From positions 1 through 64,000 of IMG/VR virus record IMGVR_UViG_2162886007_000107: a stretch of DNA of 64,000 bases. One strand, written 5' to 3'. Below are positions 1,012 through 64,000 of this stretch, in pieces (the first letter of the stretch is position 1; every line of letters begins with the position of its first letter). Position numbers and translations under genes: made by a program. The notes under the pieces are model-generated. The model searched no databases. It was not told the origin of the DNA and saw only the letters and a program-made list of their open reading frames with translations.

Positions 1012-2610
1012 ATGTCTGAACAAGCCGATAAAAACATTGGTGAAGCGGTCGCAGAAACCGTTGCTCAGGATAACGAAGCAATTCGTGAAGTCTTGGGTAA
1101 GGATGATCCCTTTGTACAAGCATTGGACGTGAAAAACCGTCCGGTAATCGATGAGACCAAAAGCGGTCCTGTCTGTGGTTGCCCGGGCGTGATTCACGAG
1201 AATCCAGAATGCCAGTTGCCGGATGCAGCGGTGGTTGCATTGGCGGCTGCTAAAGACGTTAGCCTTGCTTTGGCTCAATACGAACACAATATGCCGGCAT
1301 ACTGGGTGAGCATGATGCGCTTGCCAGGCATGCAGTCGTTCTATCCGTTCCACGATCACAGTAAAACTGGCGATCTCGGCGGTCTGTCTCTGACCCGTGA
1401 TGACAGTCCTGAACAGGCTGCTTATCTGGAAGACTATCTGGACCCCAAGAATGTCGAACCGGCATTCAAGAAGTTCTGGTCGACCTTTATGCCAAACGCT
1501 CCACAAACCGGTGCGGTGTTCGTTTACTATGGCCTGGTCGGTGACACTGAGGTTGTTTACCTCCGTTATCAGCAGGATCATGTTCACCCAATGGAGTTCG
1601 TACTGCCTCGTGCTGAACTCACCTACTTCCTGCGTGGCTGGACTGAAGCGATCACCAGCGATCACATGCAGACTGAGATGGAAGACTGGTGCAAACATCC
1701 GACCGGGTACAAAGATCTCCAGAAGAAAGGCTACCGCTATAATGTGAGTGCCCTGGCTCTGGTTCTTCCTTTGAGCTACTTCTTCGCTGATGCCTTTGGC
1801 ATTAAAGAAGATCAGTTTGCAAACATGGTCAATGGTGATTTCAAGATTCTGGAAGACATCAAGAAAGAACTGTCCAATCGCTTCGACCGTTACGTTGCCG
1901 ATATCAGCCGCTTTGCCATCACCCTGAAGGACAAGGTCAAGTTCAAAGACCACAACCTGATGCTGGCGTTCAAGGGCACTGATGACTTCCGTGGTCTGGT
2001 TGTTTCCCTCGACAAGATCTATCCGAAGTTCCCTGAAGGCGGTCAGTACGAGTGTGGCGTCAATCCACTCAAACTGGAAGACTGGAAGACCGAGGGTGAT
2101 AACGTCAAGGTTGTTATCCGCAAGCTGATTCGCCTGTCGACGAAAGTCAACGACATGCTGAACAAGATGTACCGTGAACTGCCAAACAACAAATGGTGCG
2201 AAACCTGGTTGGATGGTTTGGTTCGTGAACGTCTGCTGGCTGCGAGCCACTTCCTGAAAGAGCTGTACCAGGCTAACCCTACTGACATCCGTCCATACGT
2301 GGAAGAGATGGCCAACAAGGTTCTGTCCGCTCTGAACGAACGTGGTGGCAACATCGGTCTCGATCTGACCAGCTGGGTCGTCTACCAGTACTTCGATAAC
2401 GGCAGTCCTCCTATCCCTGTGGTGGCGGAAGGTCTGAACTTCAAGCAAGAACTGTATAACCAGCACACCGAGCGTTTCATGGAAGTGCTGTATCAGTACC
2501 TGTTCCACGTGCGTAGCCCGTACATTCGTCCATACGTCCATAAGGTCGTAGCAGACAAGAATGACGGTATCCCTGTCGGCTCGATTCGTCCGGTCAACAA
2601 AGAAGAATAA
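1012..2610 (+). CDS. Hypothetical protein with tail-tube-like N-terminal peptide
   Basis: 532-aa ORF with AAGGA RBS and strong phage codon bias; residues 32-47 match tail tube residues 20-35. Confidence 0.85.
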   Translation: MSEQADKNIGEAVAETVAQDNEAIREVLGKDDPFVQALDVKNRPVIDETKSGPVCGCPGVIHENPECQLPDAAVVALAAAKDVSLALAQYEHNMPAYWVSMMRLPGMQSFYPFHDHSKTGDLGGLSLTRDDSPEQAAYLEDYLDPKNVEPAFKKFWSTFMPNAPQTGAVFVYYGLVGDTEVVYLRYQQDHVHPMEFVLPRAELTYFLRGWTEAITSDHMQTEMEDWCKHPTGYKDLQKKGYRYNVSALALVLPLSYFFADAFGIKEDQFANMVNGDFKILEDIKKELSNRFDRYVADISRFAITLKDKVKFKDHNLMLAFKGTDDFRGLVVSLDKIYPKFPEGGQYECGVNPLKLEDWKTEGDNVKVVIRKLIRLSTKVNDMLNKMYRELPNNKWCETWLDGLVRERLLAASHFLKELYQANPTDIRPYVEEMANKVLSALNERGGNIGLDLTSWVVYQYFDNGSPPIPVVAEGLNFKQELYNQHTERFMEVLYQYLFHVRSPYIRPYVHKVVADKNDGIPVGSIRPVNKEE

Positions 2611-3308: not shown

Positions 3309-4658
3309 TCAGAGACCTTCTACTCCATCCTTCTGCATCTGCCAGCGAGTAAGTACCAGCAGTTTGGCTTTACCTACACGACGAGCAGCGTACATCTGAC
3401 CAAAACGCATTACACGAGTAATACCAGGCTGAGGCAGGCTGATATCAGTCATGACTTCGGCAGCAGCCAGGAGATCTTCCATGTTGCGGATGAACTCTTG
3501 AGTACTACGGGACAGCAGATCGAAGTCGCTATCCAGAGAAGAGATCAAGGAATAGTCAGGGTACAGGTTCAAAACCTTCTTCATGCCTTCGCGGTTATTC
3601 AACTTACCGACGATCGCCGTGTTCACGGACTTGTACATGAATGGCACGAACTGGGTGGATTTTATGACATGGTCAGTAGACATGTTTGGGGTAAGGAACT
3701 TATTGACCAGATCCATTCGTGTTTCGTTATCAGTGATCGGGCTGTAGTTACGAGCGCCGTTCGTTTTGTTCTCCAGGCCATAACGGTTGAAGAACGGGAT
3801 AACGTAGTACTCAATCGGGTTGAACAGATCAGGAATCTTTTCTTCCCACTTCGACAACGGGTATTGGGAGTCTTTGAGGATCTCGTTGCGCATTTGCTCA
3901 AAGAGTTGATCGTCAGAGTCTACACCATTACCCCACCACACATAGCGCCACCAGCCAGTAGTGGACATGCCAACGTTGGTGAGGTCCATCATCTCGAAAG
4001 AGATAGTCTCGCCATCGGTAACAGGCCACGCCGCGTTGTCAGTAACCGCATGCATGCGCTTGCTAATTACGTCAGGGGTTTCCTTCTTCAGACGTTCTTC
4101 CATTTGTTGGAAGTTCATCGGCATCAGGGAATCCATGTCTGCAAGTGCAACTGGGTGTACGATCGCAAAGGAGACCTTAGGGTATTCCCGCTTGAAGTAC
4201 TCGTCCGCAAACCAAAGATAGAAAAGCTGCTGCTCACCATCTACGAGATGGTTACCTGTTACGAAGCTGGGGAGCCAGTAACGATTGTTGGTAACCATTT
4301 CACCGATATCTTTAATCTCGATACCGTTAGAGAACTGAGCCTTGAGCAAAGCCAGAGTGTTGGGACGGTTGCCGGTGACGTTGCCTTTCTTGGCCTGATC
4401 CACCAGCCAGTTGCTGATTTCCAATTGCTTGTTAGCAATTGCAGTTGGCATCACAATCTCAACATCGTCTTCGATGCTCAAGAAGTTATGCAGTACCGAA
4501 GAACTAGGCTGATCGTTAAAAGCGAAGATGCCTTGGTCTTTGGAATACGTTTTCGACTTGTTGCTGATTTCACCGATGGGTGATACACTTTTTACCCCGT
4601 TATTGGCGAACTCGGCAATAGCCGCAAACGATAAATAGTTTTTAACACTCATTGCCAC
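3309..4658 (-). CDS. Putative virion structural protein
   Basis: 449-aa ORF; position next to the RNase H-like and UvsX genes as in phiKZ-like phages (synteny only). Confidence 0.6.
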   Translation of the reverse strand: MAMSVKNYLSFAAIAEFANNGVKSVSPIGEISNKSKTYSKDQGIFAFNDQPSSSVLHNFLSIEDDVEIVMPTAIANKQLEISNWLVDQAKKGNVTGNRPNTLALLKAQFSNGIEIKDIGEMVTNNRYWLPSFVTGNHLVDGEQQLFYLWFADEYFKREYPKVSFAIVHPVALADMDSLMPMNFQQMEERLKKETPDVISKRMHAVTDNAAWPVTDGETISFEMMDLTNVGMSTTGWWRYVWWGNGVDSDDQLFEQMRNEILKDSQYPLSKWEEKIPDLFNPIEYYVIPFFNRYGLENKTNGARNYSPITDNETRMDLVNKFLTPNMSTDHVIKSTQFVPFMYKSVNTAIVGKLNNREGMKKVLNLYPDYSLISSLDSDFDLLSRSTQEFIRNMEDLLAAAEVMTDISLPQPGITRVMRFGQMYAARRVGKAKLLVLTRWQMQKDGVEGL

Positions 4659-59931: not shown

Positions 59932-60629
59932 TTGTACTCAATCGAGATGATCGTGGGGTAGCTGTAGAGTCCATGCAGGTACCAAACGGAACAGCCATCA
60001 ACATTACTTCTGATGGCAACGGTGTTCCCAAAGTCCTTATCGGTAAATCCTCGTCAATGCTGGTAAAACACACGTTAGTCATTATGACCGACACCGGGGT
60101 GATTATCGAGGAGCACAAAAGAGAATCGTTGATTGAAAAACAATTTGTGCGTTTTAGCAAGGACTTTTATTTCGCAACGTCTATTTGCTTAACTCCAGAA
60201 GGGCGAATCCTGGGAGGTCATCGAACTAAACAGGTTGCGATTTATACAGGCTCAACTTTGGCAGAGGGGTATGAAAAACCTCTTAAAGATTTGCTCGACA
60301 ACATTGTCCTGACAACCAAACAGGACGGACCTTGGAGAGCAGTAAATAAATTTAACAATGCTTCTATCCTTGATTTGAGTGATGAGATCAAATCAACACA
60401 CACATTCTGGGGATGGTCGGAAGAACCAGGTCATTTTAGTACTGGCGACTACACCAGCAACTACGTGGGCCTGAACATGATTAAACATAGTGAGGAAACT
60501 TGGGCTTTTTGGCAAGCAAACCTCAACACCAATCCAGAAGCAATTATTGATGCTATCAAACAAGACATCGTTGAGTCTACCCGACAAGCGCATGTAAAAG
60601 CTATCCTTTTGGAAACCGGTCGTAGTTAA
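59928..60629 (+). CDS. Hypothetical protein, family member 3
   Basis: ATGA coupling; 233 aa. Confidence 0.75.
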   Translation: MIVLNRDDRGVAVESMQVPNGTAINITSDGNGVPKVLIGKSSSMLVKHTLVIMTDTGVIIEEHKRESLIEKQFVRFSKDFYFATSICLTPEGRILGGHRTKQVAIYTGSTLAEGYEKPLKDLLDNIVLTTKQDGPWRAVNKFNNASILDLSDEIKSTHTFWGWSEEPGHFSTGDYTSNYVGLNMIKHSEETWAFWQANLNTNPEAIIDAIKQDIVESTRQAHVKAILLETGRS

Positions 60630-60742
60630 CTGGCTTTCCATATTAAAGATCAGGGGCGGCTCTGATCTTGTTTCACCAGCACGCACACAATACTCCGAAA
60701 TACCCAAGCAATACCTACTAATCAATAAACAGGAAATAGATC

Positions 60743-62155
60743 ATGTCCGTACATGTAAAGATGCTCGACAAAGATGGTGTAGGCTTCCGCTTCGTAACTG
60801 TGGAAGACCCAGTTTGTATTCAACTGATTCCAACCGATCCAGATATCGGCGGTTATCCAGTTCTGCGTATTGGCCGCACTCCAGCACCAATCATCAACTA
60901 CCCACTCACCAATGACGCCTATGTCATGAACGATGCGGGCGAAACCATTTCCAAGGTGTCCCTGAAGGAATGCCTGCGGGAAGTTGGTAAAGAACAATTC
61001 CGTCCTGACCGTAAAGGTTTGGCCGAACTCCCACCGTTTGAAGAACAACATCGGAAAGTCATCTCCGATAGTCTTCGTATGGGCTCCCTTTCCGTAAACA
61101 TTAAGACCGACGACCCTGTTGGCCTGGTTAAAGAAATGCGTGAAGCATTCAACGGGACGGACAAGAATCCAAATGGTAACCGCCCGCGTCAAATCCAACT
61201 TGATCCTAGCTTCAGACGCATCGAAGCTAGTGAAGAAAAGTGGTGGGTGTACAACGGTGATAAGCTCATAGACGTCCTCATGCTCGGTGCAAGAGACCTT
61301 GCAACGCTCAATGCATGCGTCTCTCCAAATGACCGTGTTGCATTTGACGAGTACCTAATCCTTAACTGGTCGGGTAAGGCTGAAACCCTTCAAGGATTTC
61401 AGAAAGAGATTGCCCGTAATAACAAACTCTACGATGCCTACATGTTGGTAGCGGGTACTACCGTTTGTACAGCCACATCTTTTACTCCATTGATGCCTGA
61501 TCCAGAATTGGGTGCTCATTTGTACGCCTTAATCAATGGGCAGAAAGTCCACGTTTCTGCCCTGACTATGGGCGACGTCATAATCAACAATGTGTTCTAT
61601 CTGAACCCGTTGTCGGTTGATCCAACAGTTGTTGATTGTGATCCAGAAATCATGACGTACATGTTGGCTGCATCTACCGTGTATTTCCATGCTCGTCCAG
61701 AAGAACGTACCGATGAAACAGGGATCAAAGGCTGGATTGATTACGCTTTCCATGATTCCAAGTACAACGTAACCTTGCCAAAGAGTGCGGTCGGTGAAGA
61801 AATCGACTCTACTATTGAAGCTGCTTCTACAGGGCTTTGGAAGAACGCCATCTTATCTTTGACCCAATACACCAAAAATCTTCTTGGCAACCCGGCTCTT
61901 TCTGACAAGATCCAGTTGTTACAGATTCGGGTTACAAAAGGTAGCGTGCAAAGTTTCAGAACCTTCATTACCAGAAATGGTGTGGCGGTCCGTATGTTCT
62001 GGGAAGATAGGGAAGACGCGGTAACTGACGAAGCAATCGAATTAATCAAGAAAGCTTTCGATAACCCTCGCAATTACTTCTGGTTTAACGTTTACCTGGA
62101 TGTAAAGGAAGGTTACGATAGTGATCTGATTGTCAAAGAAGTAAAAAGCAACTGA
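60743..62155 (+). CDS. Hypothetical protein, family member 4
   Basis: 470 aa with AGGA RBS; AYVMNDAGETI motif. Confidence 0.75.
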   Translation: MSVHVKMLDKDGVGFRFVTVEDPVCIQLIPTDPDIGGYPVLRIGRTPAPIINYPLTNDAYVMNDAGETISKVSLKECLREVGKEQFRPDRKGLAELPPFEEQHRKVISDSLRMGSLSVNIKTDDPVGLVKEMREAFNGTDKNPNGNRPRQIQLDPSFRRIEASEEKWWVYNGDKLIDVLMLGARDLATLNACVSPNDRVAFDEYLILNWSGKAETLQGFQKEIARNNKLYDAYMLVAGTTVCTATSFTPLMPDPELGAHLYALINGQKVHVSALTMGDVIINNVFYLNPLSVDPTVVDCDPEIMTYMLAASTVYFHARPEERTDETGIKGWIDYAFHDSKYNVTLPKSAVGEEIDSTIEAASTGLWKNAILSLTQYTKNLLGNPALSDKIQLLQIRVTKGSVQSFRTFITRNGVAVRMFWEDREDAVTDEAIELIKKAFDNPRNYFWFNVYLDVKEGYDSDLIVKEVKSN

Positions 62156-62174
62156 CAGTTGTTATGTTATACAA

Positions 62175-62755
62175 GAGGTGTGCTTTCTGAACCTCTAACC
62201 CAATTCCCCGAGAGGGAATCTTTGGTCCCTTAAGGGTGGAGCCGAAGTACGTAAGGGGATATGCTATTTCGTGACTGCTTGTGTATATCCGAACCCTATG
62301 GTGGTATGTCAAAGCCACAAGTCACAACTGTTTCTATTACATGCCCGCTGGACTGGGAGCCGTTGGCCGATAGGCGAATGCGGCAAAGCACGGTCTGGTA
62401 GGATTCTGAGATAGTTGAGGCGAACCTTTACGCCTGGGGGTGATTCTAGAAAATCCCCGGGGGTCTAGGTCTTGCCCGGATGGTTCCGGGTTTTCCGGGG
62501 GAGGGGACGGCAAAGGACGTTCTTTTCCCCGGCGCTATTTAAAGGTAACGTTTATGACGGGACCTAACGAATCCGTGTAAGAGACGGTATCTGGATAAAC
62601 CTAATGTTGCGGTCTTCTCTTTAGTCTGAATAAGACGGTCAGAGTTGTGCTAGATGTTAGGATGAAAAGCCTCATGACAGAGGGCGATTCAGACTAAGCG
62701 TATTCAGTACGTCTTAGAGAGCAGGGCGTCAATCCTGTGATCTGTCCCGATTTCC
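62175..62755 (+). ncRNA. Candidate large structured ncRNA (or several adjacent ncRNAs)
   Basis: No plus-strand ORF of 60 aa or more; many helices and a potential pseudoknot; flanked by two TATGTTATAC motifs. Confidence 0.45.
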
Positions 62756-62778
62756 TATGTTATACGAAAAAGTGTTTT

Positions 62779-62866
62779 GGAGAGATTCCCGAGTGGCCAA
62801 AGGGATCAGACTGTAAATCTGACGTGCGATCGCACTTCGTAGGTTCGAATCCTTCTCTCTCCACCA
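62779..62866 (+). tRNA. trnY: tRNA-Tyr(GTA)
   Basis: Cloverleaf with TCAGA-ctGTAaa-TCTGA, long variable arm, TTCGAAT, encoded CCA. Confidence 0.95.
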
Positions 62867-63018
62867 TGTTTATTCATAAGCCAAGTATCCAACAAGCGTA
62901 AGCCTGGATGCAGGGAACCACAAAGCCAACGCGCTGCCAGTGATTGGTTAGGCAAGCAGAAAGTAACATTACAGCCGATGGTACGGTGAAATCTACTTGA
63001 CTTATGAATAGCTTTATT

Positions 63019-63095
63019 GCGGCCATAGTTCAGCTGGTTAGAATACCCGCCTGTCACGCGGGTGGTCAGGGGTTCGAGTCCCCTTGGTCGCGCCA
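63019..63095 (+). tRNA. trnD: tRNA-Asp(GTC)
   Basis: CCCGC-ctGTCac-GCGGG, TTCGAGT, encoded CCA. Confidence 0.95.
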
Positions 63096-63511
63096 AACGT
63101 GTAGCTCTTGGCCCTGTGGGTCTCCTTGGTTGGTGTGGTGTTGTTACGCCAAGAGCTACACCCTATATTCGACGCCCCGCTACCCCGCGCCCTCGCCCGA
63201 AGAAAACACTTCCTGATTGTGGTGAGTCAGGTTCTGAGCATTTAATGCAGTGTAGTAAGAGTCTATATCGCCACGCATATTCCTTCTTCAGGTTTCATCT
63301 AGGTTTCCTGGAGAGAATCTTTGCCATTGTCCCCTGGTCCGGGCTGACGTTAACCGTGTCTATGGCAGAGTAAAGTTGTCCTGGCAAATAAGCCGGATAG
63401 AGCAAACGGTAGTTTCGTATTAAAAGTTGAAAGCAGCCTGGGATGCAGTTTGAGGTGGGTCCCCTATCGACAAGGCTAGGTTTAAAGCACTTACACTGAT
63501 CCGATTTATTA

Positions 63512-63587
63512 GGCCTAGTAGCTCAACTGGCAGAGCATCGGTCTCCAAAACCGAAGGTTCCAGGTTCGACTCCTGGCTACGCCGCCA
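63512..63587 (+). tRNA. trnW: tRNA-Trp(CCA)
   Basis: TCGGT-ctCCAaa-ACCGA, TTCGACT, encoded CCA; one C:C mismatch in the acceptor stem. Confidence 0.92.
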
Positions 63588-63731
63588 AATTCCCTTACCA
63601 GATCCATTGATCAAGGACAACCTGGTAAGGTAAGAAAACACGTAGGAGCGTGCGACGGTCTACCTCCCTTGACTTAGGTCATGAGCAACGTGCGGTATAA
63701 GTCCGAAGACACGTCAAGATTTTTGTTACAT

Positions 63732-63807
63732 TCCGTGTTAGCTCAGTTGGTAGAGCAAACGACTGTTAATCGTTTGGTCCCTGGTTCGAGTCCAGGACAC
63801 GGAGCCA
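63732..63807 (+). tRNA. trnN: tRNA-Asn(GTT)
   Basis: AACGA-ctGTTaa-TCGTT, TTCGAGT, encoded CCA. Confidence 0.95.
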
Positions 63808-64000
63808 ATTCTTTAAACCTGTGCGTAATCACCCGAGATGCACCGCCCTCACAGGTTTTCATAGCTACATTCAAAATTGTCAGTCCGATCGTTGAGGTGG
63901 TCTAAACTGATAAGGCAACGCATCGTATCCGAAGGCATGTTAACTCTAGGGACCTTACCCCTACGTTAACCGCAGCCAAACCCGCCTGAGCGTTAGAAGG

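What the first reader, a model, noticed from the sequence alone, without database searches (positions are those of the whole stretch)
62871..63010. 140-nt closed-stem RNA exactly filling the Tyr-Asp spacer
Seen: TATTCATAAG-C-CAAGTA (62871-87) pairs with TACTTG-A-CTTATGAATA (62994-63010), 16 of 17 bp. It starts 4 nt after the tRNA-Tyr CCA and ends 8 nt before tRNA-Asp. Inference: tRNA processing would release it as a discrete stable small RNA.
Basis: partly seen in the sequence, partly recalled or inferred. Interest (0 to 1): 0.6.

Follow-up and report, generated by a model that had tools for sequence, protein, structure and literature searches.

The report
Conserved structured RNA in jumbo-phage tRNA operon
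The 140-nt stem-closed spacer between tRNA-Tyr and tRNA-Asp is a real non-coding RNA gene, one of five known copies of an undescribed RNA family in the tRNA operons of distantly related tubulin-encoding jumbo phages. Its core is more conserved than the neighbouring tRNAs, but what it does is unknown.

Summary
Arms 62871-62887 and 62994-63010 pair at 16 of 17 positions. The stem starts 4 nt after the tRNA-Tyr CCA and ends 8 nt before tRNA-Asp. It is the only long-loop inverted repeat of that quality in the 236-kb genome.

The window is the first 64 kb of an uncultivated PhuZ-tubulin jumbo phage. Pattern scans found four homologues. All lie between tRNAs, on the tRNA strand, in other jumbo-phage contigs (PhuZ checked in three of the four: 27-30% identical to ours).

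- The ~85-nt core is 87-99% identical, more than the co-resident tRNA-Asp (77-86%).
- The outer closing helix shares no sequence (0-33%) but stays 98.5% paired, with compensatory changes in 9 of 13 pairs.
- A 2-bp helix under a GNRA tetraloop and a variable-length hairpin also covary.

No Rfam 15 family matches, and neither do T4 rnaC/rnaD. No copy was found in cultured phages, in the scanned bacterial genomes or in ten other jumbo phages.

It is therefore a new structured RNA family. "Exactly filling the spacer" is incidental, because homologues sit in larger spacers. Release by tRNA processing as a stable RNA is plausible but unproven: one RNA-seq contig spans Tyr-element-Asp. The function is unknown. 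A trans-acting folded RNA is my best guess, and a ribozyme is the main rival.

The parts
62779..62866 (+). tRNA-Tyr (GTA), CCA encoded; upstream neighbour
   Evidence: ARAGORN; Rfam tRNA 53.5 bits
62867..62870 (+). 4-nt linker (TGTT) between the CCA and the element
   Evidence: sequence
62871..62887 (+). P1 5' arm (closing helix). The outer part is free in sequence among homologues; the inner AGTA is invariant.
   Evidence: covariation
62888..62908 (+). P2 hairpin: a conserved 5-bp stem (one A/C mismatch in this copy), an asymmetric internal loop, and a 2-bp covarying helix capped by the GNRA tetraloop GTAA (62898-62901)
   Evidence: alignments A3/A4. The tetraloop is GCGA, GUGA or GUAA in different copies.
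62909..62920 (+). Conserved joining strand J2/3 (TGCAGGGAA...)
   Evidence: invariant columns
62921..62949 (+). P3, a variable hairpin. It is expanded here to about 29 nt; the homologues have a 3-4-bp stem with a GAAA or GCAA loop.
   Evidence: The stem assignment in this copy is inferred.
62950..62973 (+). Conserved joining strand J3/4 (AGGCAAG-N-AGAAAGTAACAT-N-ACA), the family's signature
   Evidence: invariant columns. This pattern retrieved the homologues.
62974..62987 (+). P4 hairpin (GCCG / CGGT with a G-U pair, 6-nt loop). It is invariant, so it carries no covariation evidence.
62988..62993 (+). Conserved joining strand J4/1 (GAAATC)
62994..63010 (+). P1 3' arm
63011..63018 (+). 8-nt linker, which is also the 5' leader of tRNA-Asp
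   Evidence: sequence
63019..63095 (+). tRNA-Asp (GTC); downstream neighbour

Best explanation
The element (62871-63010, + strand) is a gene for a compactly folded non-coding RNA. It is the most divergent of five known copies of an undescribed RNA family carried in the tRNA operons of PhuZ-tubulin (phiKZ-like, nucleus-forming type) jumbo phages.

Shown:
- A long closing helix P1 of about 16-17 bp, whose sequence is free but whose pairing is kept.
- A conserved hairpin P2 ending in a GNRA tetraloop.
- A variable-length hairpin P3, a conserved hairpin P4, and about 45 nt of nearly invariant joining strands.
- The tRNA strand is the functional strand.

Inferred:
- It is transcribed with the tRNAs as one precursor.
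- RNase P cutting at the 5' end of tRNA-Asp, plus endonucleolytic cutting just 3' of the tRNA-Tyr CCA (RNase E or a similar enzyme), free it with tails of at most 8 and at most 4 nt.
- 3' exonucleases trim back to P1, which then protects both ends and gives a stable RNA of about 140 nt.
- The invariant junction core then binds a partner, either a protein or a small ligand of the host or phage translation, tRNA or defence machinery. It would act in trans, as is presumed for the two function-unknown small RNAs of the T4 tRNA cluster.

The partner and the physiological role are not known.
For: Homologues lie between tRNAs on the tRNA strand in L012 (277 kb), L026 (240 kb), L027 (244 kb) and L057 (151-kb contig).

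Covariance model R1 scores them at 122-142 bits and the window copy at 107 bits. Nothing else among 64 sources scores above 17 bits.

On the structural alignment A4, 97.1% of cells are paired, against about 30% when the partners are slid. Twelve of 28 pairs have changes on both sides, and 0 of 500 shuffles reach the observed values. P1 has 9 of 13 pairs with compensatory change.

Core identity is 87-99%, while outer P1 is 0-33% identical between clades. The same phages share only 77-86% of tRNA-Asp and 27-30% of PhuZ protein.

The P2 tetraloop stays GNRA while changing sequence, and P3 varies in length. Both are typical of RNAs with a tertiary fold.

G-U pairs in P1 of L012 (read from the sequences) and in P4 would be A/C mismatches on the other strand.

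No promoter-like or terminator-like site lies inside the spacer. RNA-seq run X5 has a 379-nt contig covering 62796-63104 with one differing letter.

Precedent: T4 rnaC and rnaD lie in the T4 tRNA cluster, and their roles are still unknown (PMC3014915).
Against: There is no direct evidence of a discrete processed product. The reads were assembled contigs, which cannot show ends or levels. The contig over the element has depth about 9, no higher than neighbouring non-coding pieces at 5-16, so it gives no sign of an abundant stable RNA. Standard RNA-seq under-represents small RNAs, and DNA carry-over cannot be excluded.

Only five copies are known, and three of them are close to each other. The core is almost invariant, so its internal pairings (P4, inner P1, P2 stem) have no covariation support.

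Two mutually exclusive pairings of the invariant AGUA/UACU segments cannot be told apart.

The element is absent from ten other jumbo-phage records. These include G006, whose tRNA array (Tyr-Asp-Gln-Asn) matches that of carrier G003. It is therefore dispensable or recently mobile.

No partner is identified.
Confidence: 0.55

Rival explanations
1. It is a new class of self-cleaving ribozyme, or another cis-acting catalytic module, that cuts the polycistronic tRNA precursor. This would make the phage less dependent on host RNases, like the HDV-like theta ribozymes next to gut-phage tRNAs.
For: The architecture is typical of small ribozymes: a nearly invariant junction core, helices free in sequence but covarying, a GNRA tetraloop and a variable peripheral hairpin. 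In three of five copies the element begins within about 1-5 nt of the upstream tRNA's 3' end. There is precedent for ribozymes placed at phage tRNA 3' ends (PMC10879173).
Against: No known ribozyme family in Rfam 15 matches, even at E <= 10 on the element alone. In L026 and L027 the element lies about 50 and about 170 nt from the upstream tRNA, and it is 100-350 nt from the next tRNA in four copies. A precise end-forming role for tRNAs is therefore not general. The other tRNAs of the same array have only simple hairpins after them. Nothing here tests catalysis.
Confidence: 0.17
2. It is a riboswitch-like aptamer without an expression platform. A highly expressed RNA of this kind could bind and sequester a small molecule, for example a nucleotide signal of host defence.
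For: The conserved junction nucleotides inside a multi-helix fold closed by a long P1 resemble aptamer domains. No ORF follows the element, so it is not a classical riboswitch.
Against: This is purely an analogy. There is no match to any riboswitch family, no ligand clue, and no gene association was tested beyond TROVE and RNase III.
Confidence: 0.08
3. It is a passive spacer. The long stem would merely insulate neighbouring tRNAs from misfolding, or serve as a double-strand processing site, and the enclosed RNA would have no function of its own and be degraded.
For: Every tRNA of this array is followed within a few nucleotides by a hairpin: 63099-63161, 63590-63633 and 63815-63858. P1 has a steady length of about 16-17 bp in all copies (my reading of the sequences).
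Against: A passive hairpin does not need an ~85-nt core held at 87-99% identity between phages whose tRNAs and proteins have diverged far more. None of the other spacers of this array has homologues in the relatives. No phage RNase III was found.
Confidence: 0.12
4. It is a miniature mobile element (MITE-like) with terminal inverted repeats that inserted into the spacer.
For: It has inverted terminal arms. It is present in G003 and absent from G006, which carries the same Tyr-Asp-Gln-Asn array, and it sits at different array positions in different phages.
Against: The pattern is the reverse of a MITE: the arms are the variable part and the interior is conserved. There is a single copy per genome, no clear target-site duplication, and compensatory changes that keep RNA pairing, including G-U pairs.
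Confidence: 0.03
5. It is a chance inverted repeat, or a small protein gene (the mechanical 50-aa ORF 62874-63026 on the minus strand).
For: The list of ORFs contains frames across the spacer. The fold energy alone is unremarkable.
Against: Homologues with covariation exist. The copies are 114, 114, 115, 115 and 132 nt long, so they differ by 1-nt indels. The minus-strand ORF runs into tRNA-Asp. The expected number of such repeats by chance is about 0.14 per genome.
Confidence: 0.01

Closest known systems
Phage T4 rnaC (species 1, 139 nt) and rnaD (species 2, 119 nt), the small stable RNAs of the T4 tRNA cluster
   Same: They are non-tRNA RNAs of about 120-140 nt encoded on the tRNA strand inside a phage tRNA gene cluster. 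They are transcribed from the tRNA region and their role is still unknown (PMC3014915). rnaC also folds with its ends paired.
   Different: There is no sequence or structure homology: R1 scores at most 7 bits anywhere in the T4 tRNA region with filters off. rnaC carries a T-arm-like GGTTCGAATCC hairpin near its 3' end, and this element has none. The phage lineage is also different (Straboviridae versus a PhuZ-encoding jumbo phage).
Theta (minimal HDV-like) ribozymes next to tRNAs of gut Caudoviricetes (PMC10879173)
   Same: They are small conserved structured RNAs placed directly 3' of phage tRNA genes and are thought to take part in tRNA precursor processing.
   Different: Theta ribozymes have a nested double pseudoknot, and their cleavage site abuts the tRNA 3' end. 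This element is a multi-helix junction closed by a long 5'/3' helix, matches no HDV-like model, and is not always adjacent to a tRNA.
Bacterial Y RNA-like RNAs (YrlA) with Ro60/Rsr (from my own knowledge)
   Same: They have a long closing stem formed by the 5' and 3' ends, enclosing a conserved structured module.
   Different: No TROVE (Ro60) gene is present in this genome. This element has no tRNA-like D/T-arm module. A second spacer RNA in relatives L027, L057 and L012 does have such a module, but it is not in this window.
rRNA-operon processing stalks (the RNase III stems flanking 16S and 23S) (from my own knowledge)
   Same: A long helix formed by the sequences flanking a functional RNA inside a polycistronic stable-RNA precursor. 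Its sequence is free but its pairing is kept.
   Different: The stem here is only about 16-17 bp, cleavage was not tested, and the enclosed RNA is an unknown ~105-nt core.

Membership tests
T4 rnaC/rnaD-type tRNA-cluster small RNAs | Encoded within a phage tRNA gene cluster on the tRNA strand | tested here: met
T4 rnaC/rnaD-type tRNA-cluster small RNAs | Sequence or structure homology to rnaC or rnaD | tested here: not met
   R1 against the T4 tRNA region with filters off gives at most 7.2 bits. The folds differ.
T4 rnaC/rnaD-type tRNA-cluster small RNAs | Accumulates as a discrete stable RNA processed from the tRNA precursor | not testable with these tools
   Only assembled contigs were available. 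One spans Tyr-element-Asp.
Theta / HDV-like self-cleaving ribozymes | Nested double-pseudoknot fold recognised by HDV-like covariance models | tested here: not met
   No Rfam hit at E <= 10 on the element alone or on homologue L026
Theta / HDV-like self-cleaving ribozymes | 5' end (cleavage site) directly adjacent to the tRNA 3' end | tested here: inconclusive
   Within about 1-5 nt in the window copy, L012 and L057; about 50 and about 170 nt away in L026 and L027
Theta / HDV-like self-cleaving ribozymes | Self-scission in vitro | not testable with these tools
   Needs a bench assay
Other Rfam families (hammerhead, twister, hatchet, pistol, riboswitches, 6S, SRP, tmRNA, Y RNA, GOLLD/ROOL) | Score against the family's covariance model | tested here: not met
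   Only tRNAs pass. The best other hits score 14-16 bits against gathering thresholds of 65-71.
MITE / terminal-inverted-repeat mobile element | Conserved termini, variable or degenerate interior, several copies, target-site duplication | tested here: not met
   Termini are 0-33% identical and the interior 87-99%. There is a single copy in the genome.
Y RNA / YrlA-Ro60 system | Ro60 (TROVE) protein encoded by the same genome, and a tRNA-like module in the RNA | tested here: not met
   No TROVE match in G000. The element has no T-arm or D-arm.
Intrinsic terminator | G+C-rich hairpin followed by a T run | tested here: not met
   No terminator-like site in the spacer. The stem is A+T-rich with a 106-nt interior.
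New family proposed here (jumbo-phage tRNA-array RNA) | Closing helix P1, P2 with GNRA loop, variable P3 and P4, plus the invariant strands TGCAGGGAA, AGGCAAG-N-AGAAAGTAACAT and GAAATC, on the tRNA strand of a phage tRNA array | tested here: met
   R1 scores 106.6 bits, E about 1e-23, for window 62875-63006

The most novel reading that the evidence does not exclude
The family is a new class of catalytic or ligand-binding RNA that nucleus-forming jumbo phages place in their tRNA operons. It could be a self-cleaving ribozyme that processes the precursor, or an aptamer 'sponge' that acts against a host function. Either way it would not be just a stable by-product of tRNA processing.
Probability: 0.2. 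Interest if true: 0.85.

Novelty: new variant of a known kind. Interest (0 to 1): 0.62.

Why it matters
Non-tRNA RNAs inside phage tRNA clusters have been known in T4 for decades, and no function has been assigned to them. Here is a second, unrelated family, this time in jumbo phages that encode PhuZ tubulin. Its conservation (core more conserved than the neighbouring tRNAs, between phages with about 28% PhuZ identity) argues strongly for function. At 115-140 nt it is small enough to synthesise and test directly for self-cleavage, ligand binding or protein partners. If it proves catalytic or ligand-binding, it adds a new RNA class. If it is a stable RNP component, it gives a handle on how these phages manipulate host translation or tRNA metabolism. 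Relatives carry at least two further stem-closed spacer RNAs, so jumbo-phage tRNA arrays look like an unexplored reservoir of structured RNAs.

Tried and rejected
- **Rfam.** Rfam 15 was scanned in E-value mode on 60000-64000, on the element alone and on homologue L026. Only tRNAs matched.
- **Cultured phages.** blastn of the window spacer and of the L026 copy against 50,697 cultured-phage records found nothing but roughly 20-nt chance hits.
- **Synteny through neighbouring genes.** The upstream 470-aa protein has no relatives in IMG/VR by pattern scan. The closest PhuZ relatives (L003-L006) have no tRNAs beside PhuZ and no similarity to the non-coding stretch.
- **Pattern scans.** Three independent core patterns in IMG/VR each returned the same three contigs plus chance hits: L025, L071, L028-L056 and L072-L110, which are purine-rich coding sequence. 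The metagenome scan added L057/L059/L061, and also the window's own source contig (L062) and the contig of L027 (L063). The genome-contig scan over 185,579 species gave four Firmicutes hits that score at most 13 bits with R1.
- **L049/L058.** These share only a 19-nt word, have no tRNAs nearby and do not match R1. I rejected them as members.
- **Other jumbo phages.** R1 found nothing in ten further jumbo-phage records.
- **T4.** The T4 rnaC/rnaD region gave no match.
- **Phage-encoded partners.** Neither Ro60 (TROVE) nor RNase III is present in this genome. There is one weak, stop-interrupted TROVE-like stretch in G005 only.
- **Sequencing runs.** All four runs laid (3,001 letters, within the operators' limit) were assembled contigs, so no ends, strand or levels could be read.
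- **Alternative fold.** A four-way-junction fold, in which internal AGUAGA pairs with the 3' UCUACU and P2 is extended, is favoured by RNAfold in three of the four homologues (L026, L012, L057; L027 was not folded). It has no covariation support and carries a C/A mismatch in the window copy. It can be neither accepted nor rejected.
- **Genetic code.** Only table 11 was used.

Full report
**Setting**

The window is the first 64 kb of a 236,430-bp IMG/VR virus record, estimated complete. Just beyond the window, at genome 64682-65677, lies a 331-aa protein that matches annotated PhuZ tubulins of jumbo phages by tblastn: Shewanella phage FishSpeaker at 42%, Erwinia phage RisingSun at 37%, and Vibrio, Aeromonas and Pseudomonas EL-type phages. 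The genome is therefore an uncultivated PhuZ-encoding jumbo phage of the phiKZ-like, nucleus-forming type.

The finding lies in a non-coding stretch of about 2.5 kb (62156-64680) between a 470-aa ORF and phuZ. That stretch holds tRNA-Tyr, Asp, Trp and Asn, and two odd ARAGORN calls beyond the window, all on the + strand.

**The observation**

The stem starts 4 nt after the encoded CCA of tRNA-Tyr and ends 8 nt before tRNA-Asp.

In the whole genome only 12 inverted repeats reach this quality with a loop of at most 200 nt. Eleven are tight hairpins, and this is the only long-range one. The minimum-free-energy fold uses the stem, but folding energy alone is not remarkable (z = -1.3 for the spacer and -2.0 for the 140 nt). 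Energy therefore cannot decide whether this is a functional RNA.

**Homologues**

Neighbour-gene synteny led nowhere. I then searched IMG/VR for the identical 3' end of this phage's tRNA-Tyr. That search returned 13 loci, 10 of which carry tRNA arrays and most of which come from 170-280-kb contigs.

Folding every inter-tRNA spacer of these arrays showed that the Gln-Asn spacer of L012 (a 277-kb contig) contains a clear homologue. The interior is nearly the same, while the closing stem differs in sequence but still pairs.

Core-sequence patterns then retrieved L026 (240 kb) and L027 (244 kb) from IMG/VR, and L057/L059/L061 (151-kb contigs) from metagenomes. They also returned the window's own source contig, L062. 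Four different patterns converged on the same set, and all other hits were chance matches in coding sequence.

A covariance model (R1) built from the five distinct copies scores them at 107-142 bits. It finds nothing else:
- among 64 session sources;
- in ten further jumbo-phage records;
- in the T4 tRNA region;
- elsewhere in this genome.

blastn against 50,697 cultured phages also found nothing. The signature 19-mer is absent from representative genomes of 185,579 prokaryote species, apart from four chance hits.

**What the comparison shows**

- **Position and strand.** All copies lie between tRNA genes, on the tRNA strand.
- **Closing helix P1.** On the model-guided alignment A4, 13 aligned pairs are 98.5% paired, and 9 pairs show changes on both sides. 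The outer 9 bp are 0-33% identical between clades, which is random. By my reading of the flanks, P1 extends to about 16-17 bp in every copy.
- **P2.** A 5-bp stem, an asymmetric internal loop, and a 2-bp helix that switches A-U to G-C under a tetraloop. The tetraloop is always GNRA but reads GCGA, GUGA or GUAA.
- **P3.** A peripheral hairpin that covaries (GGC/GCC versus GCC/GGC) with GAAA or GCAA loops. In the window copy it is expanded by about 18 nt.
- **The rest.** J2/3, J3/4, the P4 hairpin and J4/1 are essentially invariant.
- **Whole structure.** 97.1% of cells are paired, against 26-36% when the 3' partners are slid. Twelve of 28 pairs have compensatory change, and no shuffle out of 500 reaches the observed values.
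- **Strand evidence.** G-U pairs in P4 and in P1 of L012 (my reading) fit only the tRNA strand.
- **Not coding.** One-nucleotide length differences between copies (114, 114, 115, 115, 132 nt) rule out a conserved reading frame.

**Strength of conservation**

The carriers whose records could be searched (L012, L026, L027) are only distantly related to this phage. Their PhuZ is 27-30% identical to ours, their tRNA-Asp 77-86% and their tRNA-Asn 79-86%. The ~85-nt core of the element is nevertheless 87-99% identical.

None of the other spacers of this array has a detectable counterpart in the relatives. The element is thus the most conserved non-tRNA sequence of the operon. Either almost every core nucleotide is under strong purifying selection, or the element has moved horizontally in the recent past.

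Some mobility or loss is indicated in any case. The element occupies different array positions: Tyr>Asp here, Gln>Asn in L012, after Trp in L026/L027 and after Asn in L057. It is also missing from G006, whose array otherwise parallels that of carrier G003.

**Uncertainty in the fold**

The invariant AGUA at the inner end of the P1 5' arm can pair in two ways. Alternatively, GUA can extend P2 while an internal AGUAGA pairs with the 3' UCUACU, giving a four-way junction.

RNAfold and RNAalifold prefer the four-way junction in the homologues folded (L026, L012, L057). The window copy has a C that would give a C/A mismatch there, and it folds with the long P1. No covariation separates the two models, and they could even be alternative states.

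**Comparison with known RNAs**

No Rfam 15 family matches. This excludes detectable membership in the hammerhead, twister, hatchet, pistol, HDV-like, riboswitch, 6S, SRP, tmRNA, Y RNA and GOLLD/ROOL families.

The closest analogues are T4 rnaC and rnaD (139 and 119 nt). They are encoded in the T4 tRNA cluster and their roles are still unknown (PMC3014915). They are not homologous to this element, and rnaC carries a T-arm-like hairpin that this RNA lacks.

Theta ribozymes share the genomic niche, directly 3' of phage tRNAs (PMC10879173), but not the fold.

This phage encodes no Ro60 and no RNase III.

**Expression**

Sixteen public runs, from 16 studies, hold the 3-kb stretch or parts of it. 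They include soil, rhizosphere, indoor and plant metagenomes and coded organisms, and two of them are RNA libraries.

In RNA-seq run X5 a 379-nt contig covers 62796-63104, running from tRNA-Tyr through the whole element into tRNA-Asp with one differing letter. Other contigs of the same phage cover flanking coding and non-coding DNA at similar depth. This fits co-transcription as a precursor, but contigs cannot show ends, strand or level, and DNA carry-over is possible. The data show no enrichment of the element.

No sigma-70-like promoter or intrinsic terminator lies inside the spacer.

**Mechanism I commit to (confidence about 0.55 for the whole chain)**

The element is transcribed with the tRNAs. 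It is freed by RNase P cutting at tRNA-Asp and by endonucleolytic cutting after the tRNA-Tyr CCA. It is then trimmed to P1, which protects both ends, and it acts in trans as a compactly folded RNA that binds a protein or ligand.

That it is a real conserved structured RNA I hold at about 0.9 or higher. The release step and the trans action are inferred.

The main rival is a new self-cleaving or cis-processing ribozyme (about 0.17). A ligand-sequestering aptamer (about 0.08) and a passive insulating or processing stem (about 0.12) follow. A MITE, a chance repeat or a small ORF are effectively excluded.

**Verdict**

The stem closes a real RNA, but "exactly filling the spacer" is incidental. This is a new RNA family in a known kind of niche, with a function that can now be tested at the bench.

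Noticed in passing
L027:~3760-3945 (-), L057:~1435-1610 (+), L012 Asp>Gln spacer: Relatives carry a second stem-closed spacer RNA of about 165 nt directly beside the element. It has an 11-bp closing stem, a conserved GAGTGGGGGAATTGGTATACCC stretch, and D-arm-like and T-arm-like parts (weak Rfam tRNA hit, 17 bits, covering the D and T arms only). It is reminiscent of T4 rnaC or bacterial YrlA. A word search did not find it in the window's genome.
   Followed up: partly
L012 Gln>Asn spacer 3' half; L016 Gln>Asn spacer: A third stem-closed spacer RNA of about 100 nt (CACTGCCCATTGGC ... GCAGTGA) is shared by two 276-277-kb phages. In L012 it lies immediately 3' of the element studied here.
   Followed up: no
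window 63099-63161, 63590-63633, 63815-63858: Each of the other tRNAs of the array (Asp, Trp, Asn) is followed within about 3-9 nt by a hairpin with a 14-, 12- or 9-nt stem. None is followed by a T run and none has homologues in the relatives. They may be precursor-processing or insulating hairpins.
   Followed up: partly
genome 64079-64163 and 64174-64248 (just beyond the window): ARAGORN calls two unusual tRNAs, Ile(AAT) of 85 nt and Gly(ACC). Both anticodons are atypical for bacteria, and the first is overlong, so it may carry an insertion or be a tRNA-like RNA.
   Followed up: no
window 62156-62778 and 63096-63511: There are long non-coding stretches of about 620 nt (before the first tRNA) and 416 nt (Asp>Trp), with G+C-rich hairpins such as 62445-62510. 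No Rfam hit and no homologue in the relatives. What they do is unexplained.
   Followed up: partly
genome 64682-65677 (L002:2683-3678): A PhuZ tubulin gene lies directly downstream of the tRNA operon, after a hairpin followed by a T run at about 64497-64556 that I read as a terminator (the consensus scan did not report it). In the closest PhuZ relatives, phuZ is not next to tRNAs.
   Followed up: partly
G005:C1:190175-190561: A weak TROVE (Ro60)-like stretch (25 bits) interrupted by three stop codons lies in the genome that carries L027. It may be a decayed Ro60 gene, which is of interest given the tRNA-like spacer RNA in that phage.
   Followed up: no
runs X4 and X7 (coded organisms A and B), window 61500-63200: Two runs filed under single organisms rather than metagenomes hold pieces of this phage's tRNA region that are 100% or nearly 100% identical. 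They might point to a host or a contaminated culture. The names are coded and I did not pursue them.
   Followed up: no
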